Source: Oculina patagonica
Taxonomy: Eukaryota
Length of the DNA: 64,000 nt
Reading direction: 5' to 3'
NCBI RefSeq assembly: GCF_052425735.1
Contig: NC_135761.1
Coordinates: 32,984,001 to 33,048,000 of the forward strand
Positions 6,913-61,160 of the stretch are shown here, piece by piece; positions within the stretch are counted from its first letter, which is position 1; each line of letters starts with the position of its first letter. The notes under the pieces were generated by a model. That model did no database searches. It was given only the letters and a program-made list of their open reading frames with translations, and was not told the DNA's origin. The translations under genes and the position numbers were made by a program.

Positions 6913-8287
6913 CTTCCACAGTACAACCTTTTATCTTCATTGTCTAAATCATTGTTACTAAAGTACCTCTGACAGCACACGCCAGCTGCGCAAGTTGTCA
7001 AATTCTTACATTTACTGTTAATTACTGTGTAGGAAGAAAACACTATAATAGAAAAAATGCAATTATACACGTCTCACACAACAAATTGTCTCCCAACATA
7101 ACAAACAATAGAGGATAGTTTCCAGAATAGTATATACACTGGCATTTTTTTGGTCAACTTAATTGCAATGCAAAAACAGAAAAAAAAGTTACCTTGTATG
7201 ACATGGCCTTTCCTTCATTAAGGCCACCATAACTTGGATGTTATGTGTCATTTTGCAGCAAGACAAACAAAGCTATAACTTACATTTTTGCTATTCAAAT
7301 TCCATGTAGTTGCTCACCAACCATTTAATTTTAAATGTAACAAGTTAGCAGAGGAACCACAGGCTTGGGGAGTTTCCCTTAGAGAAAATAAAACTATTTA
7401 GTTTGAAAGCTACATACGGATTGATTTTGCCTTCACAAATGGTATGACGTAATTCACAATTAACTCTGATGAATCTTCTTGGCACAATTCCTTTGGTACC
7501 CAGAGGATACTCAGCTGTAGCTAATTGCTTGTCCCTGGAGGTGAAACGGGCCTCTTGTATTCGTAAAGCAATGGTGACAGGAGTGTGATGGCTTAATGTT
7601 GAACAGTGCTTTCCAAAGCACTGGCAACAAAGACAACTTGAAGGAAACCTTTTTTGGGCAGAAAAGCCCACAATTAACAATAAATATCCCCTATGATCCA
7701 TTCACACAACTCACAAGACTTCTCAAACTAAGTAAACATAACCTCCACACATAAAGCAACAAGAACCAAACTGGACCTTATAATCAACCCCAAACAAGAA
7801 TGTCCATTTACATGTACTGTCATACAATTTCATGAACGATATTTGTCAAGCTATTCCACTTGTATATCAAGAAAAATATATTACATTAACAAATGTCAGC
7901 TAACCTGCATAAAGGAGTGTTTTTGGCCCCTCTTCTTAAACAGTCAGACCTTTTCCCCTTAGAGAAGGTCCACTGCAGTATGCACAGAAAAAATGCGGCG
8001 ATGGCATCTCTATGATCCGCAAGGTCATATTTTTCAACAGCTTTAAGTAACAGAAAAAGCATGAATTGGTATAACTTATTTAATAATTGCTACTACAATC
8101 TTGGACAAAACTGTTGAAACACATAGCAAATTTCCACCAATTTTGCTAACAGAATTCAGTTTTGCACCCCCCCCCTCCCTCCCCCATTTTCAATGTTGTT
8201 AATAATAATAAATAAATGGTGTTTATAGTGGTCATGCACTTAGCTTCATATCTCTACGAGATAGCAAGAACAAAAAGGTATTGAATA

Positions 8288-27122: not shown

Positions 27123-28999
27123 ATTATTCTAATATATCCAGTTGTGTCACAAACAATGGTTTTTCGACGCCATTGTTCAATGTTGAAAGAGGTGTTAGAC
27201 AAGGAGACCCGTTGTCACCGTATCTGTTCATCATAGTGTTGGAACTACTATTAATTAAAATAAGAAGTGATCCTCGTATTAAAGGAATTAAAATTGGTAA
27301 TATAGAGGTAAAACTTGCAGCCTTTGCTGATGACTTGACAACATTTGTACACAACAAAGCCTCCATAGAACATTTGTTCAGTACACTGGGACTATTCGAA
27401 AAATGTTCAGGCTTGAAATTAAACAAAGACAAAACGGAGGCCTACTGGCTCGGGAGTAGCCATAATTGTAAACAAAACTTGGGTATAGAAACTGTTAATG
27501 AACCAATGAAGATTCTGGGAATTTATTTTACGTATAATTCTCGCCTAAAACATGAACTTAATTTTGAAGCAATACTTAAATCTTTAAAGAAAACCTTGAA
27601 TGGTTGGCAATGGCGAAATCTAACTGTGTTCGGCAAGATTCAAATCATTAAAACATTCGCAATGCCAAAACTCATGTACCGTGCTTCCGTATTAAATCTA
27701 GACAAAGATTTTTTGAAAAAGGTTAATTCTGTGATGTTTAATTTTTTATGGAACAGAAAAGATAAAATCAAACGCTTAGCTCTGATCAGCGATTATAAAG
27801 ATGGCGGTCTGAAAATGCCTCACGTGGAGTCTGCAATCAAAACTCAGAGAATCATTTGCCTAAAGAAGTATACTGAGAACTATCATAGCCCTTGGAAACT
27901 TATTCTATCAAGGATTCTCAAAGATCACGGCGAGAAATTCCTTCTTCATTGTAATTACAATGGTGCTGATCTACCTAAACACCTTCCTAAATTTTATCGC
28001 GAGTGTTTTGAGACCTGGGCGACAGTCAATACTAAAGAAATGTCCTCCCGAGACGTCATCATGGATCAAATACTATGGAACAATCAATTTCTGCGTATTG
28101 GGGGTAAACCTCAATTTTGCAAAAAATCATATATGGCTGGAATTGTAAAGATAAAAGATATCCTTCTCCCGAACGGCAAATTAAAAACTTGGAATTTCTT
28201 TAGAGAAAAAGGGCTGAATTTTAACAATTATTTCTTAATCCTTGGTCTGTCAAAAGCACTTCCAGACGCATGGAGAGTCTTGATAAACTCGAAAAATCCA
28301 CAACCCCCTGATGCGCAAGAGCAGAGCACCACCACAAGTTTGGATTTAACTCAGTTTGTGCTCAATTGTAATAATGAAGAAATTAAGCTCAGTGAACTCA
28401 CGAGCAAAAGACTGTACTGGATTCTGATAGGGAACATACATGTCCATCCTACTGCAAGATTAAAATACAACTCTTTATTTGATGATCAAAATCTTGACTG
28501 GAATCAAATTTATTTAACGCCACAAAAAGTGACTTTAGACATTAAAACAAGAATGTTTCAATTTAAAATTCTTAATCGTATAATATATACTAACAAATTG
28601 TTGAATAAAATGAGGCTAATAGATACCTCGTTATGTACGTTTTGTGGAGAGTACGAAGAATCTCTCGAGCATTTGTTTTTACACTGCAAATTTACCATAG
28701 ATTTCTGGACGCATACTACTAACTGGTTAAATAAATTAAATATTACCATTTCTAGGCTAAATGACAGCGAAATTCTGCTAGGTATTACAAAAGAAAGTCC
28801 TCATTGGACTCTTCTCAATCATATTCTCATTGCTGGTAAGCAAGTAATCCACGCTAATCGGCTCAGGAAAACAAAACCACTCCTACCTCAGTTAATAGCT
28901 AAACTTAAATATATTGAACACATTGAATATTGTATCGCTAAGAAAAGGGACAGGCTTAATTTTCACCTACAGAAATGGGAAATACTTAAGTTTTCTTGA
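27123..28999 (+). CDS. LINE ORF2 C-terminal part: RT plus zf-RVT
   Basis: RGVRQGDPLSPYLF, AFADD, SGLKLNKDKT, DGGL, CTFCGEYEESLEHLFLHC; no stops over about 625 codons. Confidence 0.92.
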
Positions 29000-50330: not shown

Positions 50331-50509
50331 GGGGAATATGTTTTTTGCGTAGTACTTAAATAAATACAAGCAATATGCAAAATACCGGCACATATTAAGT
50401 TAAACATTTTTTGTGTCATTTAGCTCCAAAATGTGGCATTGCAGTGTAATACGCAATACTACTAACAGTAATAACATGTCGTATTACCAATTTTTTGCTT
50501 TGATTTTCA

Positions 50510-51695
50510 GAAAGCCATCCTAAACACCTTAAAGTCTGGAATGAAAAGCAAGTCAGCTTTCTACTAAAAGTCCTTGATGCTGCGCTCAACTGTATTCCTG
50601 ATTCAGAAAAGGATTTGCAGGAAAAGGATGAGAAAGAGTTTGGGGATTGGTTAACAAAGCAAGATTTTTAAGAAAAGAGGCAGCCAACATTTGCTATCAG
50701 GATCTCTCGCTCCACCATCTAGTCAAACGCACGGTGGGATAAGTCAGAAACTTTGATCCTTCCCCTGTCTTTGGAGAATAATGCAACCACAACTGGAACT
50801 GCAGTTATTATTGAGCATTTTGGTCAGGAGTTTGGTGTGCCATGTGAACATGCCAAGGAGTAACTCCCCTTCAACAAAAAGGCACAATCCTTTGACATAA
50901 ATGCTGCACGACAGCATCAGGTCTTTTGGCCTCTTTAAACAAGCACAGGACAGAGATGACTGAAACAATTCGACAATTGACTGAAGCTGAAAAGGCCTTG
51001 GAAATCATCCAACCATCACAAAAGGTGCAAAATGACAGTTTCTCTCCAGAGGAAGACGACCCAAGTGTCAGCAACATCCAAAAGATTGATACAAAATTTC
51101 AAAATATCTTTTACAATGTGGTGAATAAAATGTGGGAGGCACAACAAGCAAGTGATGCCAGTGAGTACGAGAAGTTTACTAACTGGTTGTCAATGCAAAG
51201 GAAGAACTGGGAAGATGCAAAGGATGACAATGCTAGGACTATACTTCATGCAGCTCTTGAGAACAGAAACATGACACTTGTCAAAACTCTGTTCTCTGCT
51301 GGGGTGAATGTGAATGTGAAGGAGAAATGTGGAGCAACTCCTCTTACATTGGCTGTCATCAGAAAAGATGAGGACATTTGCCCTTTCTTGTTGAGCAACT
51401 TTGCAGTTTATAGTGATTACTTTTTCAGCACCATTCCAAGTCCACACAGCATTGCCAGACAGTAAGACATAAAAGTTGCAACTGATAGGAATGAAAGAGT
51501 GAAATCAAGAACTTCTGTTGATACAGAACTTTGCAAACTCTTCTAGCATGGCGAGGATAAAGAAACCACTGTCAATGATTCTGAAGTTGCCGAGCAATCA
51601 CACATGGCAGAAGGTCAGAAATATGACAGGGACAGTAAATGTTCAAAGACATTGATTGTTGGTGATCAGGGCAGCAAAGTTGAAACCCTTCAATA
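50510..51695 (+). pseudogene. Ankyrin-repeat-containing, Academ-like transposase remnant (partial copy at 53807-54325)
   Basis: [27 protein letters not shown]; ANK repeats RTILHAALENRNMTLVKTL..AGVNVN..KCGATPLTLAV; LIVGDQG. Confidence 0.6.
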
Positions 51696-52179
51696 GCAAA
51701 TTGCTACAAACAGCCTGGAACATGCAGTTAGATACTGTGCGACAGCTGGCTAACCAACCATGTCCTTTGGTCGATGCTCTAGGCTGTTGTTGGCAGCCTT
51801 AGAACAGCTCTCAAATGTAGCTAGGGAGTCTGGGCATACAGAAAAGAAAAAAACGTTGCCATTTGTCCAATGCATGGCATTGATTTGCCCCTTCAGGAGT
51901 GTATAGAGATGCCTTTTTTTTTCTGGTGGTTACTTTTAGACTACCTAAACTGCTACAATCTTGGACAAAACCTGTTGAAACATACTCATTTCACGCATTA
52001 TTTGTCCATAACTTTCCTCTCCAGCGGAAAAAATAAAATTCTCTACCCCCTACTCAATGTTGTTTTATGGGGTTTGGGAATGACCTAGCTTCACTTTTAC
52101 AACAACTTCCTATGCACAACATTGAAATGGGGGAGGGGGGTTAAAGAATTGAACAGAGATACCTACATGAGGGAAATAC

Positions 52180-53806
52180 GAACGTAACGTAAACAACACA
52201 AGGAATGCGAGGAGATTATTTTGAATTTTTTGTTTCATTTTTACATTAAATCCAGGAATTATTAACATCAACGAGAGACTCTTTTGAGTACCGTACAACT
52301 TCGGGACATAAGTGGTGCCGGGACCAGGACACGCCGGGAGAAAAGGAGTGTAATTTCAACACAAGACATTGCAAACATGGGAGACTCGGACAACAAGAAA
52401 ACCGACCAAGGTGACACAGGAATGACACAACAAGATCTTGAAAAGAAAATCAAGAAAGAGATCGTCAAACTCAAATTCTACTTAGAGGAAGGCGATGAGC
52501 TCTTAGAAGACGGCGCTTACGGCTAAATTTCTCTTACGTGCAAGCGAACGGATGAAATCCAAGACCGCCTAAACGACCTTATGTCAACACTACAAGAACT
52601 TAAAATTGACCGTGGAATTTCAACGCAGAGAGAAGTAAGGCAGTGGAAAAAGGACTTAAAGGCCACATACGTGCCACTTCTGGAGATGAAAACCAAACTG
52701 AGCAAGGTTCTGGAGGAAAGAGAGCGAAGCAAAAGTCAAAAGGCCGAGGAGGAGAAACTCAGAGCAAAATTCGAGCAGGAGGAGAAATTTAGACGCGAGA
52801 TCCAGCAACAAGAGAAGGAACTTTGGGAAGAGAAAATGACGGCGGAGTTAAAATTGACGGAAACGAAAATTGAGATGGAAAAAGCCGCGAAAGCCGCCAG
52901 TGCAAAGCTGCCGGAGCTCAAGATAACCCCTTTCAACGGCACTTCAGTTGACTGGATCAGGTTTGAAAACATGTTTACCTCGCAAATAGACAGCAAGCCA
53001 TTATCGGACGAGGAAAAATACGGCTATCTTTTGGAGCTGGTGGCCCCTAAGGTAAGAGATAGACTAGCCAATTTAAAGCCGGGTACGCTGGGGTACAAAA
53101 CGGCGTGGGGCAGGTTAAGGACTGAGTTTGGACAGAGCAAAACTGTCTTCGCTGCGCATATGGAAGAGATAATCAATTTACCAGTTACTAGAGGATCAAA
53201 TTACGAAAGGGTACGCGAATTTTATGAGAAGCTGAGCAAGAATTTTGACGCGTTGCAAACTCTGGGGGAGGGAGAGATGCTCAAGGGTTTTGTCCTGTCT
53301 ACCTTAAACAAGCTTCCCCAAGTGAAACCTGATTTGGTGATAACAGACGAAGGGTGAGAAGATTGCAACATGGAAAAGTTGATCGATTCTATCCAAAAAT
53401 GGCTCAAGCGCAACAAATCCGAAGACAATCACAGAGACCAAACGGAGCCAAAGAAAAGGAAACAAAGTTATTTTGGCCAGAAACAACCCCACTGCCGGTT
53501 TTGTGGAAATAACCACTGGGGAGAATCGTGCCTAACGTACAACACAATCGCGAAACGGAGAGAGTTCTTTGCAGCAAGACGGCTATGTTTCAATTGCGCC
53601 CGCCCAGGACATTCTGGGAAGGAATGTCAAGGCAGAGTGTGCTATAAGTGCAAAAGCAAACACCACACCAGTCTATGTGATAGGCCCAAAAGGAGCGAGA
53701 CGCAAGATCCCAATGCCCCACTAAGCGGATACACGCCTTCTGTTGAGCAAAGGTCCCTACCTGCCATTGTACCATTGAAAATCCAAGAGAGTACGTTTTG
53801 GGCTTA
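52180..53806 (+). mobile_element. BEL/Pao LTR retrotransposon fragment (LTR end, PBS, gag)
   Basis: PBS-like TGGTGCCGGGACCAGG at 52313; DUF1759-type KLPELKITPFNG..DW..FENMF; CRFC..H..C, CFNC..GH..C and CYKC..HHTSLC knuckles. Confidence 0.88.
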
Positions 53807-54567
53807 ATTGGTTGTCAATGCAAAGGAAGAACTGGGAAGATGCAAAAGATGACAATGCTAGGACTATACTTTATGCAGCTGTTGAGAACAGAAACATGAC
53901 ACTTGTCAAAACTCTGGTCTCTGCTGGGGTGAATGTGAATGTGAAGGAGAAATGTGCAGCAACTCCTCTTACATTGGCTGTCATCAGAAAAGATGAGGAA
54001 ATGTGCCCTTTCTTGTTGAGCAACTTTGCAGTTTATAGTGATTACTTTTTCAGCACCATTCCAAGTCCACACAGCATTGCCATACAGTTAGACATGAAAG
54101 TTGCAACTGATAGGGACGAAAGAGTGAAATCAAGAACTTCTGTTGATACAGAACTTTGCAAAATCTTTTGCAAAGCATGGCGAGGATAAGGAAACCACTG
54201 TCAATGATTTTGAAGTTGCTGAGCAATCACACATGGTAGAAGGTCAGAAATATGACAGGGACAGTAAATGTTCTACGACATTGATTGTTGGTGATCAGGG
54301 CAGCAAAGTTGAAACCCTTCAATAGGAAATTGCTACAAACAGCCTGGAACATGCAGTTAGATACTGTGCGACAGCTGGCTAACCAACCATGTCCTTTGGT
54401 CGATGCTCTAGGCTGTTGTTGGCAGCCTTAGAACAGCTCTCAAATGTAGCTAGGGAGTCTGGGCATACAGAAAAGAAAAAATACGTTGCATTTGTCCAAT
54501 GCATGGCAGGAGTGTATAGAAATGCATGTTTTCTTCTGGTGGTTACTTTTAGACTACCTAAACTGCT

Positions 54568-54880
54568 ACAATCTTGGACAAAACCTGTTGAAACATACTC
54601 ATTTCACGCATTATTTGTCCATAACTTTCCTCTCAAGGAAAAAAATAAAATTCCCTCCCCCCTACTCAATGTTGTTTTATAACTTTCCTCTCAAGGAAAA
54701 AATTAAATTCCCTCCCCCCTACGCAATGTTGTTTTATGGGGTTTGCGAATGGCCTAGCTTCACTTTTACAGCAACTTCCTATGCACAATATTGAAATGAG
54801 GAGGGGGGTTAAAGAATTGTAGTGAGATACCTAGATGAGGGAAATGTAGCCCAGTGTTTCAACAGTTTTGTCCAAGATTA
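54568..54880. mobile_element. MITE (CAATCTTGGACAAAA family); partial copies at about 8095 and 51955
   Basis: TIR CAATCTTGGACAAAA(C)CTGTTGAAACA ... TGTTTCAACAGTTTTGTCCAAGATT. Confidence 0.7.
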
Positions 54881-55379
54881 GGTAAATGACATTTTAGTTA
54901 AAACCCAGGAAACAATATCTATTTCGGTCATCAAACTTTTTGAGTTTTTGATACTCTGCGAGTTATACAACATAAAATTATCATCTAGGATAAATTCCTA
55001 AATCAAGTTTAACAGGAATGTAAATTTAATAGATGTTCGTGCTTATGTTACCATATTAACGTTCTACATGTCCATGACACCACCACATGTGGTCCTTTAT
55101 GGCATTCTGCACCAGTATTCATTTTTGGATTTGTTAACGAACTATTGCAGCGACAGCATTTTCGCAAGGGAAAGCGAAGGTTTTACACTGGTGTTGCTGT
55201 AGAGAACAGTACAAGAAGTTGGACGATCATTATCACCTGGCATTGAAACTCGACCGTAATCAGTGGTGGTTGAGTGCGAAAATAATTCTTCTTAAAGAAT
55301 ACTCCATTTCAGTGAACTTCTTCAACAAGCATCACAATTACTACAGTGCCTGGCGGTATGTTAGGAAATGTGAACACCT

Positions 55380-55803
55380 CAAACATTCCTGTTAAATCCC
55401 CTTACAGTAATCTTCAACAAATTTTGCACCCCAACTTCAGGGACCTTTGCTTGGACCGGTGTGGAGAACGCAGAATGTATATTTCTGAATGATTTTCAAT
55501 GGTCCCCCAGCCTTATCCTGTGGCAAGATCTATTGCTCTTGCTGGGGGCCAAATACCCATTTTGTGAAGGGATATTTCATTTAATGCCGACATGCCTATC
55601 TTCTGCACAGGAAAACACTGTCTCGTGTACAATAAAACGGTGTTATTGATGTTATTGACTGTAATGATGGCTCTATGTTTCATGGTGTTTTATTTCAATT
55701 ATCAAATCCTGCAGGCAAGACAACGTGAGATCCCGCCATGTGGAAGATGTTTTTCTCGCTTTATTATGGCAAGCCTTCAACAGAAAACCATTTTTGATGA
55801 TTA
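55380..55803 (+). pseudogene. SF3 helicase fragment (parvovirus NS1/CRESS Rep-like)
   Basis: (GK)TFLLNPL after a truncated Walker A, SGTFAWTGVENAECIFLNDFQW (Walker B), WQDLLLLLG, PIFCTG (motif C) and C-terminal PCGRCF. Confidence 0.7.
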
Positions 55804-57332
55804 ACTTTTTACTTACGTATTGAGAATCTGACATTGGATGAAAGCCACAAAGACACTGAGGAAGACATTGCTGATGATCCCTATGAAGAGACGGCACAAC
55901 AGAGCCAAGAAAGCGATGAAAGTGTGAATAAAGAACAAGCCAGTTCAAGTTTTAAATGCATGCAAGAAAGAGTTGGAAATTATTTCCAAGCTCTGTGAAA
56001 AAGAACCACGACACAGTTTGAAATGCAGGCAACTCGAGATAATCCTTGCTAGCCGTCAAGCAGTTAAAGAAGATTGCCATAACCAGGTGAATTTGCAGAA
56101 GTATACTCCTTTTCCAACGTGCAATCTGGCAAACCACATGTTTGACAAAAATCACTGTTTTAACGACATTCTGAATTTAAATAAGCCGGGAGATCTCTTA
56201 AATAAAGGCAAAGGAACACACAGATAATACACTTCAAAAGCTGCGCCATTTTCCTCAACTCCACCTAACACATGCCCTTGTAATCTTGCATGTGACAACC
56301 TGTATGAAAATATACGGCAATTTCACGGATGCTTGAGCAATAATTTTCCATAATTTACATAATAAGCTACCTATTAATACCGTAAGACTTTAACAGGGCT
56401 TTAATCCCTAAAAATCCCGCTGAACTGGGACAATGGCTCCAGAAACCAAGTCCAAGAGGACATAATTCCTGTGTGCAAAGCAGATGAGGAATAGATTTTC
56501 ACATACATGCGCGCTGGTTATATACGCATGGATCTTAAACAAGAGAGGTCATTTAAACACATCTTCCTTAATTTAAGTGTTGTTATAGTACTGTTTTCTC
56601 CTGTACTATGAAAAGTTAAATTTTTTTCACTGAAACAGTATCACTCAAGTTTGATTTTTGCTTGTCGTTGTTGTACAGACAGTAGTATTACTAGTATTAC
56701 AGAGACCTAAAGGATTTAATTTCTTAGTTTCTTATCCGAAAAAAAAACTGAGGGATTGGATAGGAAGTATGGTATGTTCTATTATTTCATCTGACATATA
56801 CATTTTACCTTTCACATAATACAAATATCACATTTTCTATTGCACCCAGTCCCTCTTAAGCTTCCATGGCTAACAAAATTATACCTTGTGAAACTAAACA
56901 CCACAGCTTCGGTACTGTGAGTTACAACTAGGTGTATGTTAGGAACCAAAAAGATGATATTTTACAATCATTTTATAATACTAATTGTAGAATAACTTTA
57001 TTTCCCATAGGATCTAATTTAATCCTTGGATGTCTGGGAAAATCATTTTAAAGCCTTAAGATGAGCCCCTCATGGAAGAATCCTGCCACGATGAAAGTCC
57101 CCGGAGTGATATACTATCACCTTCAGTAACTGCAGGTGAATGCAAAGGGTCTTGGGTCTTAACCACCAAACGATGAATTACTTGGTCAATTTCCTTGATC
57201 CAGTGACCATATCCATACCCAGCACACAGAAAGTAACTGGTTTAAAGCAAAAGAGAAATTCAAGAAAATGAAAGGCACTACAAATCCAAACTTCCTATAA
57301 GAATAACTACTAATTCACGAAGAGAAAATAGA

Positions 57333-57521
57333 GTGGATGACTCTAGAGCTTTTGTTGTGGTACCACCCTTTATTCTTGGTGATTCGGTCTACAGACTCAC
57401 CAACTGGTTAATGAAACCCTTTCAGACCAGAGAAACCTTTCGTATGAGAAGTTGGTGTTCAACACAGCCCACAGTTAGTCAAGTGGTGGTGGAAGATTCC
57501 TATAGACCTATGGCAACATGA
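57333..57521 (+). pseudogene. HARBI1-like DDE nuclease fragment
   Basis: PPFILGDSVYRLTNWLMKPF. Confidence 0.7.
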
Positions 57522-58789
57522 AGGATGTATCAACTAGCATCTCATATATTGTTTTCCAGCGAATTTAACATAATACCCTAAAGGATTACATAACCCTATC
57601 TACGTTATATTCGTCCGATTCAAAATTCAAGCATAATTAGCATGTTAGTTTCTCATGTTATTTCGTAAAAATTCAACAACAATGTCGTCCACACAGCCTT
57701 TGTCTCATTTGCCTCCATGTCCACTGTCTGAACTGCCATCAGGGGGCATTTATTATATATCCACTTGCTTATTGCCAACCGCTTGCGAGCATCTGCTATG
57801 GTTGCTCAGGGAGTCTCTAAAGCCAAGTGGTCAAATTTCCCCACCCCCACAGGTTATCGCTATCCTTTCCAACATGATAAGATCGTATTTCCACAACCAC
57901 AAAGAGTACCACAAGCCATCAAACGGGGTATTATCTCTGTATGACTGGCTAAAACGAACAAATTGATAGTTAAGTTGGCAGAGAGCACTTCTACAGAAGT
58001 TGTGTATGCCTTGGTTGTTGGTTCAAATCCAGACGGAAGCAATTATTATTGTTTTCATTTTTATCTGTATAATAATCAGTATGCCGTTTCACTTAAAATT
58101 TGAAGGTTGAACAGACGGTACAGTTAATTTTGATATCACAGAATGTTAGGATTGAATGCCCGCTATTTCAGTGAAACTTCAACCCCTAAAATCAAGTGTG
58201 TTCCTAGTCACATTTTTCGTTGCGGAAAAATTAAGGCTTTTGGATGATAAAGACAAAACAAAAGGAAACAACCATTCCGCAAAATAGTTCGCAACAATGC
58301 AAATTTCGTTAATTAACAGCTTTTTTCAATGAAAATGTAGGGCTTAAATGCAAAATCAAAATCCTACGAAAATGCTTCTGGTACAATGTAACGGCTTGGA
58401 TTTAGCTTTCGATAGTCAAGAGCTAATGTTCCTAGGTAAGTACTTGCTATCAAATAAGTTGTTCTGTTTGAAGGCAGAATTTTCATATTATGAATTTAAT
58501 TGTTATGTTTTGGTTCCTGGACCTGATTTCCATGTGATTATTTTGATGGCTGCGATGGCTAGGTTCACTGAAAGAAAGAGTTGAGTGATCGTAGTGGTGA
58601 GATGAAAACAACTATTTAGTGGTCGTTGCAAGAATCGCTGTAGTTCTATCTCATCAATCGTAGCAGTCGTAAAAATCATATGGAGATCACGTTACTTTCC
58701 ATGATTGTAGATTGTTGTGATGATAAATAAAAAACAATGTAGTGCATTGTTGGCTGGTCCAAGTCTCCAACATTTTTATTATTTTGTGG

Positions 58790-59050
58790 CAGAGTTTGTC
58801 TCAAGCCAGTGGCTATAGCGATGGAATACAAGTGTTTTGATTTCTTGCCATTTAGTCTTGATGTTCAGGTATCAATTGATATCAGGTATAAATTGATATC
58901 GCCGAGAGACTTGACTTCTTGCATTCAAGAAACGTGGTTCACCACGATTTAAAACCAGGGAATGTCCTACTAGGTAACAGAAATTACGTGCGAGCGGAAA
59001 ACGAGAATGATCAATTGGAAGATTTGAACTTCCACCAAGCTATTGGCTGT
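58790..59050 (+). pseudogene. Protein kinase catalytic-loop fragment, not in the ORF track
   Basis: AIAMEYKCFDF.PF ... IDIAERLDFLHSRNVVHHDLKPGNVLLGN (about 58892-58978). Confidence 0.75.
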
Positions 59051-59159
59051 TTTTAACATCCAATAGAAAAAAAAGCATTTTCAATCCTAAACTTCCGTAT
59101 AAAAGCAAAAAATTATGTTTGCCACAGATTGCGCTCAATCACTACTCAATCAAAAACAC

Positions 59160-60060
59160 ACTATAGTAGTAACTAAAGAGAAACACTATAGTTCCGAAAC
59201 TGCAGTCATGCTTTATTTTTACAATGATTGAAAATAACCTGACGAAACATTTAAAGAAAGCAACCTTGACGAAACCATGAGGGAAAACAACTATGATGGA
59301 GAAGATGGAACTGAAAAGCACTCAGACATCTCCCTCCTTGACTCAGAAGGCGAACTTGTTAGTGGCCAAAGAAGCCTGTCGCGATTTCCCTTGCGCACGC
59401 GGTCCTACGAAAAACAGAAGACCCTCAAAGGGTTCCATACTGATACATGCAACCACAAAGGAAAACAACCACTCAAGTTTGAAAAAGGCGGCCCTACTAA
59501 CCAACGACCATGCCAGTCGGCTAAAGACAAGATACCAGCCATAAAATGGAGAATCGAGAGATCCGAACGGGCCATCCAAAAAACTCCAAGCTCACATTGA
59601 AAAGGGCACATGCCTGAGAGACTTTAAATATGTAGCAAAGGCTAACATCTACGCGGACGATGAGTTCAAAACAGACGTCCACGCATTAAGGAAAGTAGAT
59701 GAAAGAAAATTGTTTCACTCTTACTAAGTTCCACCACTGAAGAAATGAAAGGAACAACGCAAAACTATGCAAAATGAAATCAAGCTGTGTAAACACGAGA
59801 CCTGACCCACAGCCAAGTACAAGTGGTTTGAAACCAAAGAACAAAGAGAAAATGTAATTGTGACTGATTCTGATCTGAACGAGAAAATGCAAAAAGTTGA
59901 CATGTTAAAGAAACTGGAAGGAATATGTAAACCTTATCCCTGTGTTATCTTTGATTGTGAAATTAGAACACAAAGGGGGGTCAAAAAGCGAAAAAGCACA
60001 AAATAAATAACAAAAAACACAATGAAGGAAGAAAAAAAACTTACAAAACTGTTACGGCAT
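59160..60060 (+). mobile_element. Penelope-like element 5' remnant (pLTR with hammerhead plus ORF N-terminus)
   Basis: Hammerhead-like CT(A)AAGA-gaaac/gttcc-GAAA-CTGCAG-TC at 59173-59207, then a decayed ORF KIPAIKWRIERSERAIQ..HIEKGTC..KYVAKANI..DDEFK. Confidence 0.55.
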
Positions 60061-60169
60061 AGCCAGATAGCAAACGTTGTTTTTTAAGCAATCACGCCCC
60101 ATGCCTTCTGTTTTGTAATGCCATAGCCCTGCTTTGCTGCTACGGTATCATCTGAGAATGGAGAGCTTA

Positions 60170-60552
60170 CAAGCCGGGAGGCAAAGGATTGTGTACCTTA
60201 TAACGTATATTTGCGCTGACCTTGTAAAGTTTCCAACAAAAGCGCAGTTATACAATCAGTTATACAATCTCGGCAGAATTTTAGCGTTAGAGTTGTACAG
60301 TGGGCTGTATGTATTGAGGGACATCACAACACCGATGTGGAAGGTGAGGAATTAAACCAGTACCATTATCATATGGCTATCAAACTGGCCAAGAGGTATA
60401 GATGGTTTCAGGGTAGAAAGCATTTAGAAGAACATTTCGGCATCAAAGTTAACTTCAGTGACAGTCATAACAGCTACTACAGCGCCTACTGCTATGTGAC
60501 AAAGGAAGACAAGGAAGAAGTGAGGCACACTCTTATAGACCTGGCCAAGTAA
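60170..60552 (+). pseudogene. HUH rolling-circle Rep endonuclease remnant
   Basis: Motif I VYLITY, VVQWAVCIEGH, motif II HYHMAIKL and motif III YYSAYCYVTKED; one frameshift. Confidence 0.8.
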
Positions 60553-60629
60553 CAGTATGCTGTCTGCTTTCAGGAAGGTGTAGCCATTCTTCCTTCTTTG
60601 CAAGTCTCAAGCTCAGCCAACATCTCAAT

Positions 60630-61160
60630 CCAAGGTGAAACTTTCCAAGAGGGCTTGGCCCCGAAAGAAGTAAAGAAAGCCTACAGGTTTAACGAAAAAC
60701 AAAAGAGCTATCTAGATGCGAAATTCAACATAGGTGACTCAACTGGTAGAAAGGTGGAGGCAGATGTAGTGGCAAAACAAATGCAACGTGCCAGGGTTGT
60801 TTGCTGTCTCTGAATGTCTGATTCCTCAGCAAGTGTCATCTTACTTGCAGCAAAGTGGCGTCATCAGCAATTTGAGGTGACACCAGAAGATGTTTTGGCA
60901 GCAGAGGATCAAATACATTTCTCTCAGGCAAGAGAAGATGTGATCTCCGCTCTGCATAACCGAAACCCAATAATTGTGGACCAGTACGAGACATGTTAGT
61001 CACTAATAGAGCGGAGTTCTAGAAAACAAAGTTGGGAATGCTGCAGCAGCTGTGCCAAAGTTTGGAGCTTGATGTTTCAGTACCGTCGGTGAGGAAGAAG
61101 GCTCCTTATATGGCACTTCTGGAAGAGCTAGTAGACAGCTGCCCCTGCATAGCTACCAAA
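60630..61160 (+). pseudogene. C-terminal remnant of a large DNA-transposon ORF, possibly Sola3-type
   Basis: RFNEKQKSYLDAKFNIG..TGRK...VAKQMQRAR and RKKAPY..LLEELV..C.C. Confidence 0.45.

What the first reader, a model, noticed from the sequence alone, without database searches (positions are those of the whole stretch)
55380..60552. Remnants of an HUH Rep + SF3 helicase rolling-circle element in an animal genome
Seen: an HUH endonuclease with all three RCR motifs (YLITY, HYHMA, YYSAYCYVTKED) at 60170-60552 and an SF3 helicase remnant (TFLLNPL, FAW, IFLNDF, PIFCT, terminal CxxC) at 55380-55803. No capsid gene is recognisable. Known: Helitrons pair HUH with an SF1 Pif1 helicase, Replitrons lack a helicase, and HUH+SF3 is the CRESS/parvovirus architecture. 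Inference: these are two decayed copies of a capsid-less, virus-like Rep transposon family. The helicase lies upstream of the HUH here, so they are not one intact ORF.
Basis: partly seen in the sequence, partly recalled or inferred. Interest (0 to 1): 0.75.

Follow-up and report, generated by a model that had tools for sequence, protein, structure and literature searches.

The report
Coral transposon carrying a virus-like Rep
The two fragments are dead remains of a replication-initiator gene (nicking domain plus helicase) from an abundant, apparently undescribed family of coral and sea-anemone mobile elements that pair this virus-like gene with a Tc1-type cut-and-paste transposase and carry no capsid.

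Summary
The window is Oculina patagonica (stony coral). It holds two decayed remnants of one Rep family, at 55138-55804 and 60134-67. It also keeps a 5' terminal repeat (54569-54880).

Intact relatives of 425-496 aa are numerous in anthozoan genomes. They combine a CRESS-like HUH nuclease, a helical linker and an SF3 helicase in one ORF.

In seven divergent lineages Rep lies convergent to a Tc1-like (DD34E-spaced) transposase. In the six of them read on chromosomal contigs, the 4.3-4.7 kb unit has these features:
- It is bounded by 148-277 bp direct repeats.
- Each repeat has its own short inverted ends (ACAATC...GATTGT) and a conserved hairpin.
- The outer junctions read TA.
- In the copy checked there is no capsid-sized ORF.

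Repeat pairs are 92-100% identical within a copy but differ between lineages. Some metagenome contigs are circularly permuted or longer than one unit.

My inference is that Rep copies a one-repeat circle or concatemer and the transposase integrates it. This mechanism is not proven. I found no description of the family in the searchable literature. The window copies themselves are inert relics.

The parts
54569..54880 (+). 5' terminal direct repeat (DR) of element copy 1. It has a left inverted end (ACAATC...), a decayed C-rich/G-rich hairpin with an internal ~59-bp tandem duplication, and a right inverted end whose last bases are lost. It is preceded by T, so the junction reads TA-CAATC.
   Evidence: Sequence read. 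The end-motif search gave 3 hits against 0.49 expected. Same layout as the DRs of six chromosomal relatives. The hairpin no longer folds better than shuffles (z -0.03).
55138..55804 (+). Rep remnant, copy 1 (a broken gene, given as one part). It holds HUH motifs II and III followed by the SF3 helicase Walker B to C-terminal CxxC region. Breaks: at least 2 frameshifts, one large internal deletion (about 160-180 residues, covering the linker and Walker A), and the first 35-50 residues not recognisable. About 190-205 of roughly 440 residues remain.
   Evidence: tblastn outer bounds and counts. Profile hits E 7e-25, 2e-25 and 5e-15. Best relatives are P0057 (74%) for the HUH part and P0218/P0272 (63-65%) for the helicase part.
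60134..60567 (+). Rep remnant, copy 2 (a broken gene, given as one part). It is the HUH nuclease domain only, with motifs I-III. Breaks: 1 frameshift, 1 in-frame stop, and loss of the C-terminal 280-325 residues (the whole linker and helicase). No terminal repeat is recognisable upstream.
   Evidence: tblastn outer bounds and counts. Profile hits E 2e-28 and 5e-6. 72% identical to Porites lobata P0273. No hairpin or inverted end found upstream.
60601..61160 (+). Fragment of the C-terminal part of an unrelated transposon-like protein family (P0285-like, with a HeH/LEM-like tail). It abuts and replaces the 3' part of Rep copy 2.
   Evidence: tblastn of P0285 gives E 6e-6 at 60601-60795. blastp of the window pieces against P0286, P0307 and P0285. 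HeH domain found in the relatives.
51955..52177 (+). Duplicate of the left two-thirds of the copy-1 terminal repeat. It lies inside a ~1-kb segmental duplication (51180-52177 matches 53805-54845 at 94%) that also copies the host ankyrin-repeat exon. It is not an independent insertion.
   Evidence: blastn self-comparison; sequence read.
8095..8197 (+). Third remnant of a terminal repeat: left inverted end, C-rich tract and TCAATGTTG core, preceded by T. The rest is missing.
   Evidence: Pattern search; sequence read.

Best explanation
**What is in the window (shown).** There are two old, inactivated fragments of the Rep gene of an anthozoan mobile-element family. One of them still carries its 5' terminal repeat.

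**What the family is (shown in relatives).** It is a 4.3-4.7 kb unit with this layout: DR, then Rep on the + strand, then a convergent Tc1-like DD34E-spaced transposase on the - strand, then DR.
- Rep is about 440 aa: a CRESS-like HUH nuclease, a helical linker and an SF3 helicase.
- The transposase is about 365 aa.
- Each 148-277 bp DR is bounded by about 27-nt inverted ends (ACAATC...GATTGT).
- Each DR holds a conserved two-tier hairpin. The outer C/G stem varies in sequence but stays complementary. The inner stem is invariant (TCAATGTTG / CAACATTGA).
- The outer junctions read TA.
- In the copy whose ORFs were listed there is no capsid-sized ORF.

In a one-DR circle or tandem form, the DR lies between the divergent 5' ends of the two genes. 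This is the layout of an ambisense CRESS genome with the capsid gene replaced by a transposase.

**How it most likely works (inferred).**
- Rep nicks at or near the hairpin and copies the unit by rolling-circle replication.
- From a chromosomal copy, the two hairpins would delimit a unit-length circle.
- Multimeric products then offer a left end of one DR and a right end of the next DR.
- The Tc1-like transposase joins these ends into a TA target.
- This regenerates two identical DRs at each insertion.

In short: copy-out by Rep, paste-in by a DDE enzyme. The window copies lack the transposase, the second DR and an intact Rep, so they do nothing today.
For: **Architecture of Rep.**
- Intact relatives of 431-496 aa hit Parvo_NS1 (above the Pfam cut-off in P0032 and P0061), PPV_E1_C and RNA_helicase in the C-terminal half. 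The N-terminal half gives weak hits to REP_ORF2-G2P, Gemini_AL1 and 117-like_vir.
- The AlphaFold model (pLDDT 85.7) matches AAV2 Rep68 over both domains (E 7e-12), and also Rep40, papillomavirus E1 and Vientovirus Rep.
- The nuclease-domain model (pLDDT 89) matches CRESS Rep nuclease domains best (Vientovirus E 8e-5, TM 0.74; also geminivirus, circovirus and nanovirus Reps). SIRV1 ORF119 and pMV158 RepB follow.
- Residues invariant across 24 sequences of 35-66% identity include motif I Y/L/T/S, the two His of HUH, the Tyr and Lys of motif III, the Walker A Gly and Lys, and the Walker B Asp.

**Abundance and hosts.**
- 1338 clusters at the 50% identity level reach E<=1e-3.
- 372 near-full-length hits were found. 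All the named ones are Porites, Oculina or Exaiptasia. Actinostola is added.

**Linkage of Rep and transposase.**
- Rep and a convergent DDE_3/HTH_Tnp_Tc3_2 transposase occur together in L001, L002, L003 (with L004-L010), L011, L012 (transposase fragment only), L013 and L014.
- Across lineages the two genes diverge in step: 51-59% identity for Rep against 43-58% for the transposase.
- The transposase matches only the Sleeping Beauty catalytic domain in the PDB (E 6.5e-9), with no gap between the second catalytic Asp and the Glu in that alignment. That Sleeping Beauty is DD34E is from my own knowledge.

**Ends of the element.**
- DRs, inverted ends and T...A flanks are seen at 6 of 6 5' ends and 5 of 6 3' ends. 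Inner junctions show these bases in only 1 of 6 cases.
- The hairpin is conserved. It has 22 pairs, 5 of them with compensatory changes, and ssDNA fold z-scores of -3.3 to -5.7.
- DR pairs are 100% identical in three copies and 92-98% in three others, yet DRs differ between lineages.

**Circular or tandem forms.**
- Some contigs are circularly permuted, with terminal overlaps of 141, 141, 141 and 30 bases, as k-mer assemblers leave on circular or looped repeats, plus one of 286. One scaffold spans 1.42 units.

**No capsid.** Rep and the transposase are the only long ORFs in the L003 copy.
Against: - Circular-looking contigs can be assembly loops created by any element with terminal direct repeats. 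The 1.42-unit scaffold may be a repeat-resolution artefact. No read-level evidence for circles or concatemers was available.
- No nick site could be identified. Unlike CRESS origins, the hairpin loop is not conserved, so the conserved palindrome could instead bind the transposase or act as a bidirectional promoter.
- A DDE enzyme, inverted ends and a TA target would suffice for mobility without Rep.
- The TA duplication cannot be strictly proven, because the A and T also occur at the inner DR junctions and no empty site was compared.
- Selection tests are weak. The transposase shows 5 synonymous and 7 nonsynonymous variants among near-identical copies. The Rep count (9 synonymous, 0 nonsynonymous) is biased because the look-up required an identical protein.
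- Nothing in the window itself bears on the mechanism.
Confidence: 0.55

Rival explanations
1. This is a Tc1-like cut-and-paste transposon that captured a viral Rep gene as cargo. Rep plays no part in mobility, or only a regulatory or host-interaction role. The direct repeats arose by duplication of one end.
For: The DD34E-spaced transposase, the ~27-nt inverted ends and the TA flanks are all that a Tc1/mariner element needs. The circular contigs may be assembly loops.
Against: Rep catalytic and ATPase residues are invariant across lineages that differ by 35-66%. Rep and the transposase diverge in step. A hairpin distinct from the inverted ends is conserved, with compensatory changes. DR pairs are homogenised within copies but diverged between lineages, which plain cut-and-paste does not explain.
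Confidence: 0.25
2. The main form is a small circular plasmid-like or virus-like episome of anthozoan cells (4.0-4.5 kb, Rep plus transposase). Chromosomal copies are occasional by-products of integration.
For: Circularly permuted contigs with overlaps of 141, 141, 141, 30 and 286 bases at the unit length of 4474-4476 bp. An ambisense CRESS-like layout with a hairpin between the divergent genes.
Against: Copies sit in megabase chromosomal contigs of several species, with DRs and TA junctions. Decayed relics such as those in the window show long residence in the germ line. There is no capsid for transmission between cells.
Confidence: 0.12
3. These are ordinary endogenous viral elements: chance integrations of an exogenous CRESS-DNA or parvovirus-like virus.
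For: The Rep architecture and fold match viral Reps.
Against: No capsid gene. There is constant linkage to a transposase inside a bounded unit, high copy number (264 member sequences in one 90% cluster), and many intact ORFs.
Confidence: 0.04
4. This is a Rep-only rolling-circle transposon of the Helitron or Replitron type.
For: An HUH Rep is present, and tandem or more-than-unit-length forms occur.
Against: The helicase is SF3, not the SF1 Pif1 type. The motif III region has two invariant Tyr (Y111 and Y117 in P0238 numbering), with Y117 spaced YxxK, and the nuclease fold matches CRESS Reps best; which Tyr is catalytic was not tested. The ends are inverted repeats with TA flanks. A DDE transposase is always present.
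Confidence: 0.04

Closest known systems
Rep of CRESS-DNA viruses (Cressdnaviricota) and their ambisense genome layout
   Same: It has an N-terminal HUH nuclease with a YxxK motif III, a helical linker and a C-terminal SF3 helicase in one ORF. The nuclease fold is closest to Vientovirus, geminivirus, circovirus and nanovirus Reps. A hairpin lies in the region between two divergently oriented genes.
   Different: Sequence identity is only 9-16% and no Pfam Rep family reaches its cut-off. The second gene is a Tc1-like transposase, not a capsid. The conserved sequence lies in the stem of the hairpin, not in the loop. The hairpin region is bounded by transposon-type inverted ends. Copies are chromosomal.
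Parvovirus NS1 / AAV Rep68-Rep40 (also papillomavirus E1 helicase)
   Same: These are the best full-length structural matches (AAV2 Rep68 E 7e-12; parvovirus NS1s in BFVD). Parvo_NS1 is the only Pfam family above its cut-off.
   Different: Identity is 12-18%. The nuclease domain resembles CRESS Reps more closely. There are no terminal hairpin telomeres of the parvovirus type and no capsid.
Tc1/mariner superfamily, Tc1-like DD34E (Sleeping Beauty)
   Same: The relatives have a DDE_3 plus HTH_Tnp_Tc3_2 transposase. The alignment to the Sleeping Beauty catalytic domain has no gap between the second Asp and the Glu. They also have short terminal inverted repeats and TA at the junctions.
   Different: The ends are 148-277 bp direct repeats, each with its own inverted ends. 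The element carries a second, conserved Rep gene and a conserved hairpin. More-than-unit-length or circular assemblies occur.
Teratorn (piggyBac transposon fused with a herpesvirus; PMC10175614, title and abstract seen)
   Same: The concept is the same: a cut-and-paste transposase module combined with a viral replication module in one mobile unit.
   Different: Different transposase superfamily, a different virus class (large dsDNA), about 180 kb against about 4.5 kb, and a fish host.
Replitrons and Helitrons (PMC10288648)
   Same: These are eukaryotic transposons encoding an HUH Rep. Replitron Rep is distantly CRESS-related.
   Different: In the Replitron paper's schematic (PMC10288648) SF1B and SF3 are the fused-helicase types and CRESS-DNA Reps carry the SF3 one. 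That Helitrons pair Rep with an SF1B helicase and that Replitrons lack one is from the finding's text and my own knowledge; that neither encodes a DDE transposase is from my own knowledge; that paper does not contain the term 'DDE'. Here an SF3 helicase and a DDE enzyme are both present.

Membership tests
HUH Rep with SF3 helicase (CRESS/parvovirus-type initiator) | HUH motif (two His around a hydrophobic residue) and motif I | tested here: met
   Present in both window copies for HUH, and in copy 2 for motif I. Invariant in 24 relatives.
HUH Rep with SF3 helicase (CRESS/parvovirus-type initiator) | Catalytic Tyr in a YxxK-type motif III | tested here: met
   Both window copies keep the motif. 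The Tyr and Lys are invariant in relatives. Catalysis itself was not tested.
HUH Rep with SF3 helicase (CRESS/parvovirus-type initiator) | SF3 helicase with Walker A, B and C in the same ORF | tested here: met
   Met in intact relatives. In the window, copy 1 lacks Walker A and copy 2 lacks the whole helicase.
HUH Rep with SF3 helicase (CRESS/parvovirus-type initiator) | Membership of a curated Rep family by sequence (Pfam cut-off) | tested here: inconclusive
   The window pieces hit no family. Relatives pass only Parvo_NS1, and only in 2 of 12 tested. The nuclease-domain families stay below their cut-offs.
Endogenous CRESS-DNA or parvovirus provirus | A linked capsid gene | tested here: not met
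   The 4.7-kb L003 unit has no ORF of 150 aa or more other than Rep and the transposase, and the longer antisense ORFs lie inside Rep. Gene calls at the other loci show the same two genes. A spliced capsid gene is not excluded.
Tc1/mariner (IS630-Tc1-mariner) DNA transposon | DDE/D transposase of the superfamily | tested here: met
   Met in relatives: DDE_3 E 4e-11, HTH_Tnp_Tc3_2, Sleeping Beauty E 6.5e-9. Not met in the window, where the only signal is a marginal profile hit elsewhere (E 0.009).
Tc1/mariner (IS630-Tc1-mariner) DNA transposon | Terminal inverted repeats | tested here: met
   ACAATCnnGGnCAnAA and its complement lie at the outer ends of six chromosomal copies and at 54568, 51955 and 8095 in the window.
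Tc1/mariner (IS630-Tc1-mariner) DNA transposon | TA target-site duplication | tested here: inconclusive
   The outer junctions read TA-CAATC...GATTG-TA at 6 of 6 5' ends and 5 of 6 3' ends. No empty site was compared, and the A and T also belong to the repeated unit.
Tc1/mariner (IS630-Tc1-mariner) DNA transposon | Simple structure: one transposase gene between two inverted ends | tested here: not met
   There are two genes and 148-277 bp terminal direct repeats.
Helitron | RepHel protein: a two-Tyr HUH fused to an SF1 Pif1-like helicase; no inverted ends | tested here: not met
   The helicase matches SF3 families and structures only. Inverted ends are present.
Replitron | Rep without a fused helicase as the sole transposition protein | tested here: not met
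   An SF3 helicase is fused to Rep and a DDE transposase is linked to it. The criterion is from the finding's text and my own knowledge; the passages of PMC10288648 read describe the paper's domain schematic and CRESS-DNA Reps but do not state it.

The most novel reading that the evidence does not exclude
The family is a previously unrecognised class of eukaryotic mobile element: a capsid-less, CRESS-like rolling-circle replicon that uses a Tc1-type DDE transposase as its integrase. Rep copies it out and the DDE enzyme pastes it in, which regenerates LTR-like repeats at every cycle. It would be a living link between small ssDNA viruses or plasmids and cut-and-paste transposons, and it is widespread in Anthozoa.
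Probability: 0.4. Interest if true: 0.9.

Novelty: new variant of a known kind. Interest (0 to 1): 0.72.

Why it matters
If the linkage is functional, a DNA transposon would owe its copy-number gain to a viral-type replication initiator and its integration to a DDE enzyme. To my knowledge and in the papers I could search, this combination has not been described in eukaryotes.

It would explain how terminal direct repeats can be renewed without reverse transcription. It would also give a natural example of module exchange between ssDNA replicons and transposons. This exchange is often invoked for the origin of CRESS viruses and bidnaviruses but is rarely seen in an active state.

There are practical consequences too. 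Hundreds of coral "hypothetical proteins" are copies of this element, including the O. patagonica model that the window encodes. Viromics surveys of corals may miscount these copies as CRESS viruses.

Tried and rejected
- **Pfam on the eight window pieces, each searched apart:** nothing significant.
- **PDB sequence searches:** with a window piece and with profiles, only weak hits appeared (SIRV1 ORF119 0.23-0.75, AAV Rep40 0.02, E1 0.05). The classification therefore rests on the full-length relatives and the fold searches.
- **Transposase in the window:** tblastn (E up to 5) and a profile found only one marginal hit, at 50419-50667 on the - strand (E 0.009). I do not assign it to either copy.
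- **DNA of intact elements against the window:** only the Rep coding parts match.
- **Terminal repeat or hairpin upstream of copy 2:** none found.
- **A second terminal repeat downstream of copy 1:** none found.
- **DR at 51955 as an independent insertion:** rejected. It belongs to a segmental duplication that includes host sequence.
- **TCAATGTTG at 27177:** chance, in a reverse-transcriptase-like context.
- **The piece downstream of copy 2 as a third Rep domain:** rejected. It belongs to another TE protein family.
- **Selection test on near-identical copies:** too few differences, and the Rep count is biased by the exact-protein look-up.
- **Literature:** eight successful searches of the library (one more failed on a term format) found no paper describing a Rep plus Tc1-type transposase element. 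Repbase and subscription journals could not be checked.
- **Named cluster members for ten divergent full-length Reps:** none carry a name.

Full report
**1. What is in the window**

The window has no N. It encodes, exon by exon, the Oculina patagonica gene model ACROYT_G014384 (P0001). Its first 66 residues equal a window ORF starting at 59277. Its last 88 residues equal the HUH remnant. I compared each exon separately and joined nothing myself. The DNA is therefore stony-coral nuclear DNA.

The region is likened to viruses of animals, so I searched every open piece apart. I give breaks only as counts.

- **Copy 2 (60134-60567, + strand).** This is the HUH nuclease domain only. It has 1 frameshift and 1 in-frame stop, and the C-terminal 280-325 residues are missing.
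- **Copy 1 (55138-55804, + strand).** It actually begins with its own HUH remnant (motifs II and III), which is 35% identical to copy 2 (E 1e-9). It continues into the helicase Walker B to C-terminal region. It has at least 2 frameshifts and one large internal deletion of about 160-180 residues that removes the linker and Walker A. The first 35-50 residues are unrecognisable.
- **Nothing else in the window.** A profile of 24 intact relatives finds these two places and nothing else in the 64 kb.

**2. The protein family**

Pfam is silent on the window pieces.

The word search with the copy-2 piece found short relatives. Their profile, run against 1.84 billion representative proteins, found 1338 clusters with E<=1e-3. 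The longest proteins are 431-496 aa.

These full-length proteins have two recognisable halves:
- The N-terminal nuclease domain gives weak hits to REP_ORF2-G2P, Gemini_AL1 and 117-like_vir.
- The C-terminal half is an SF3 helicase. Parvo_NS1 is above its cut-off in two proteins, and PPV_E1_C and RNA_helicase also hit.

A search with the full-length P0032 gave 372 hits, mostly 420-485 aa. The named ones are from Porites harrisoni, P. lobata, O. patagonica (on a contig of the same length as the one that carries P0001, probably the window's chromosome) and Exaiptasia diaphana. Actinostola is added.

Twenty-four sequences of 35-66% identity keep the following residues invariant: motif I, both His of HUH, the Tyr and Lys of motif III, the Walker A Gly and Lys, and the Walker B Asp.

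Structure predictions agree with this reading:
- The AlphaFold model of the Oculina protein (pLDDT 85.7) matches AAV2 Rep68 across both domains. It also matches Rep40, papillomavirus E1, Vientovirus Rep and B19 NS1.
- In the viral structure library it matches an uncultured-virus Rep and many parvovirus NS1s, all at 11-16% identity.
- The nuclease domain alone (pLDDT 89) is closest to CRESS-DNA Rep nuclease domains, then SIRV1 ORF119 and pMV158 RepB.

The HUH+SF3 reading is therefore correct, and the two domains do co-occur in one ORF.

**3. Genomic context of intact relatives**

Rep is followed about 0.6-0.7 kb downstream by a convergent 357-365 aa transposase (or its broken remains) with DDE_3 and HTH_Tnp_Tc3_2 domains. 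I saw this in seven divergent lineages: L001, L002, L003 with its near-identical copies L004-L010, L011, L012, L013 and L014. L012 keeps only a fragment of the transposase.

The only solved relative of this transposase is the Sleeping Beauty catalytic domain (E 6.5e-9), with no gap between the second catalytic Asp and the Glu in the alignment. That this corresponds to DD34E is from my own knowledge of Sleeping Beauty.

Rep and transposase identities to the Porites copy fall together across lineages (51-59% against 43-58%). The two genes therefore evolve as one unit.

The six copies on chromosomal contigs (98 kb to 64 Mb) share one structure:
- Each is bounded by direct repeats of 148-277 bp, spaced 4.0-4.6 kb apart.
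- Every repeat starts ACAATC and ends GATTGT, with about 27-nt inverted ends.
- The base outside is T at 6 of 6 left ends and A at 5 of 6 right ends, so the junctions read TA.
- At the inner junctions these bases occur in only 1 of 6 cases.

An alignment of the six repeats shows a conserved inverted repeat in an otherwise diverged sequence. Its parts are:
- an outer C-rich/G-rich stem, whose sequence changes but whose complementarity is kept;
- an invariant inner stem (TCAATGTTG / CAACATTGA);
- a variable loop of 30-73 nt.

The consensus fold has 22 pairs, 5 of them with compensatory changes. ssDNA folding z-scores are -3.3 to -5.7.

In the Porites copy the only long ORFs are Rep and the transposase, so there is no capsid gene.

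**4. Circular or tandem forms**

Eight loci encode the identical Porites Rep. Seven of them are short metagenome or SRA contigs.
- Three of 4615 bp are circular permutations of one another, each with a 141-base terminal overlap. Others have overlaps of 30 or 286 bases.
- All give a unit of 4474-4476 bp, which equals the DR spacing in the chromosome.
- One scaffold spans 1.42 units (transposase, Rep, transposase).

This pattern fits circles or tandem arrays. It could equally be the assembly loop expected for any element with terminal direct repeats.

**5. Mechanism (inference)**

In a one-repeat circle the DR lies between the divergent 5' ends of Rep and the transposase. This is the layout of an ambisense CRESS genome with the capsid gene replaced by a transposase.

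DR pairs are 100% identical in three copies and 92-98% in three older ones, yet DRs of different lineages share little beyond the ends and the hairpin. Both repeats of a new insertion therefore seem to come from one template.

The simplest account is as follows:
- Rep makes unit circles or multimers by rolling-circle replication from the hairpin region.
- The Tc1-like transposase uses the left end of one DR and the right end of the next to insert DR-Rep-transposase-DR at a TA.
- In a chromosomal copy, the two hairpins would allow Rep to release a unit circle. This is the principle known as replicational release of geminivirus partial repeats (my own knowledge, not tested here).

The following are shown: the architecture, the linkage, the ends, the hairpin and the homogeneity of the repeats. 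The following are inferred: nicking at the hairpin, the existence of circles or concatemers, and the division of labour between the two enzymes. The main rival is that Rep is mere cargo of a Tc1-like transposon.

**6. Back to the window**

- **Copy 1's terminal repeat.** Searching for the end motif found the 5' DR of copy 1 at 54569-54880. It is preceded by T and lies in the same orientation as Rep. Its hairpin is decayed, it has an internal ~59-bp tandem duplication, and the very last bases are lost. The host-element boundary of copy 1 is therefore at 54568/54569.
- **What copy 1 lacks.** Its transposase and 3' DR are gone.
- **DR-like stretch at 51955-52177.** It is part of a ~1-kb segmental duplication (51180-52177 matches 53805-54845 at 94%). 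The duplication also copies a host ankyrin-repeat exon.
- **Third end remnant.** It lies at 8095-8197.
- **Copy 2.** It has no recognisable DR. It is followed at 60601-61160 by a fragment of an unrelated TE protein family with a HeH/LEM-like tail.
- **Subfamilies.** The two Rep copies belong to different subfamilies. Copy 2 is 72% identical to a Porites lobata protein. Copy 1's helicase part is closest to P0218 and to the P0272 lineage of L013, and its HUH part to P0057.
- **Status.** All the window copies are inert relics.

**7. Comparison with known systems and novelty**

- By Rep, the family works like CRESS-DNA and parvovirus initiators, but it passes no curated nuclease family threshold.
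- By transposase, inverted ends and TA junctions, it falls in the Tc1/mariner superfamily. It fails that superfamily's simple one-gene, two-inverted-ends structure.
- It is not a Helitron, because the helicase is SF3 and inverted ends are present. It is not a Replitron, because it has a helicase and a DDE enzyme. It is not an ordinary endogenous virus, because it has no capsid.
- Eight successful literature searches (one more failed on a term format) and the Replitron paper gave no description of such an element. I could not check Repbase or subscription journals.
- I rate it a new variant of known kinds, with a fair chance of deserving a class of its own.

Noticed in passing
window 51180-52177 and 53805-54845: A ~1-kb segmental duplication (94% identity) carries an ankyrin-repeat exon (ORF 53812-54186, Pfam Ank_2 3.5e-8) together with the left part of the element's terminal repeat. 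The duplication therefore happened after the insertion.
   Followed up: partly
window 59277-60549: The O. patagonica gene model ACROYT_G014384 (P0001, 155 aa) splices an ORF of unknown nature (66 aa) to the dead HUH remnant (88 aa). It is probably an annotation of a transposon relic rather than a host gene.
   Followed up: partly
window 60601-61160; proteins P0285, P0290, P0296, P0300: A fragment of the C-terminal part of an unnamed protein family with members up to 689 aa, which has a HeH/LEM-like tail and looks like another transposon. The Actinostola gene model P0040 is likewise a Rep fragment followed in the same orientation by the tail of this family. That makes two independent cases in two species.
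   Followed up: partly
window 58919-59053: A short ORF with the catalytic-loop region of a protein kinase (Pfam Pkinase E 7.5e-5, below the cut-off). Together with the ankyrin exon it may belong to a host gene whose introns hold these relics.
   Followed up: no
window 50419-50667 (- strand): A marginal match (E 0.009) of a profile of the element's transposases, over its HTH region. It may be a remnant of any Tc1-like element. I do not assign it to the Rep copies.
   Followed up: no
L003 4800-5350: A MITE-like unit with 62-nt inverted ends (87% complementary) lies directly upstream of the Porites harrisoni element copy.
   Followed up: no
L013 9171-9598: Between the transposase gene and the 3' repeat of this copy there is a long, nearly perfect palindrome: 149-nt arms, 89% complementary, nested inside a 32-nt inverted pair. 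It may be a nested insertion.
   Followed up: no
window 57333-57521: A short ORF whose sequence reminded me of PIF/Harbinger-type transposases. Pfam gave no hit at E 0.1, so this rests on memory only.
   Followed up: partly
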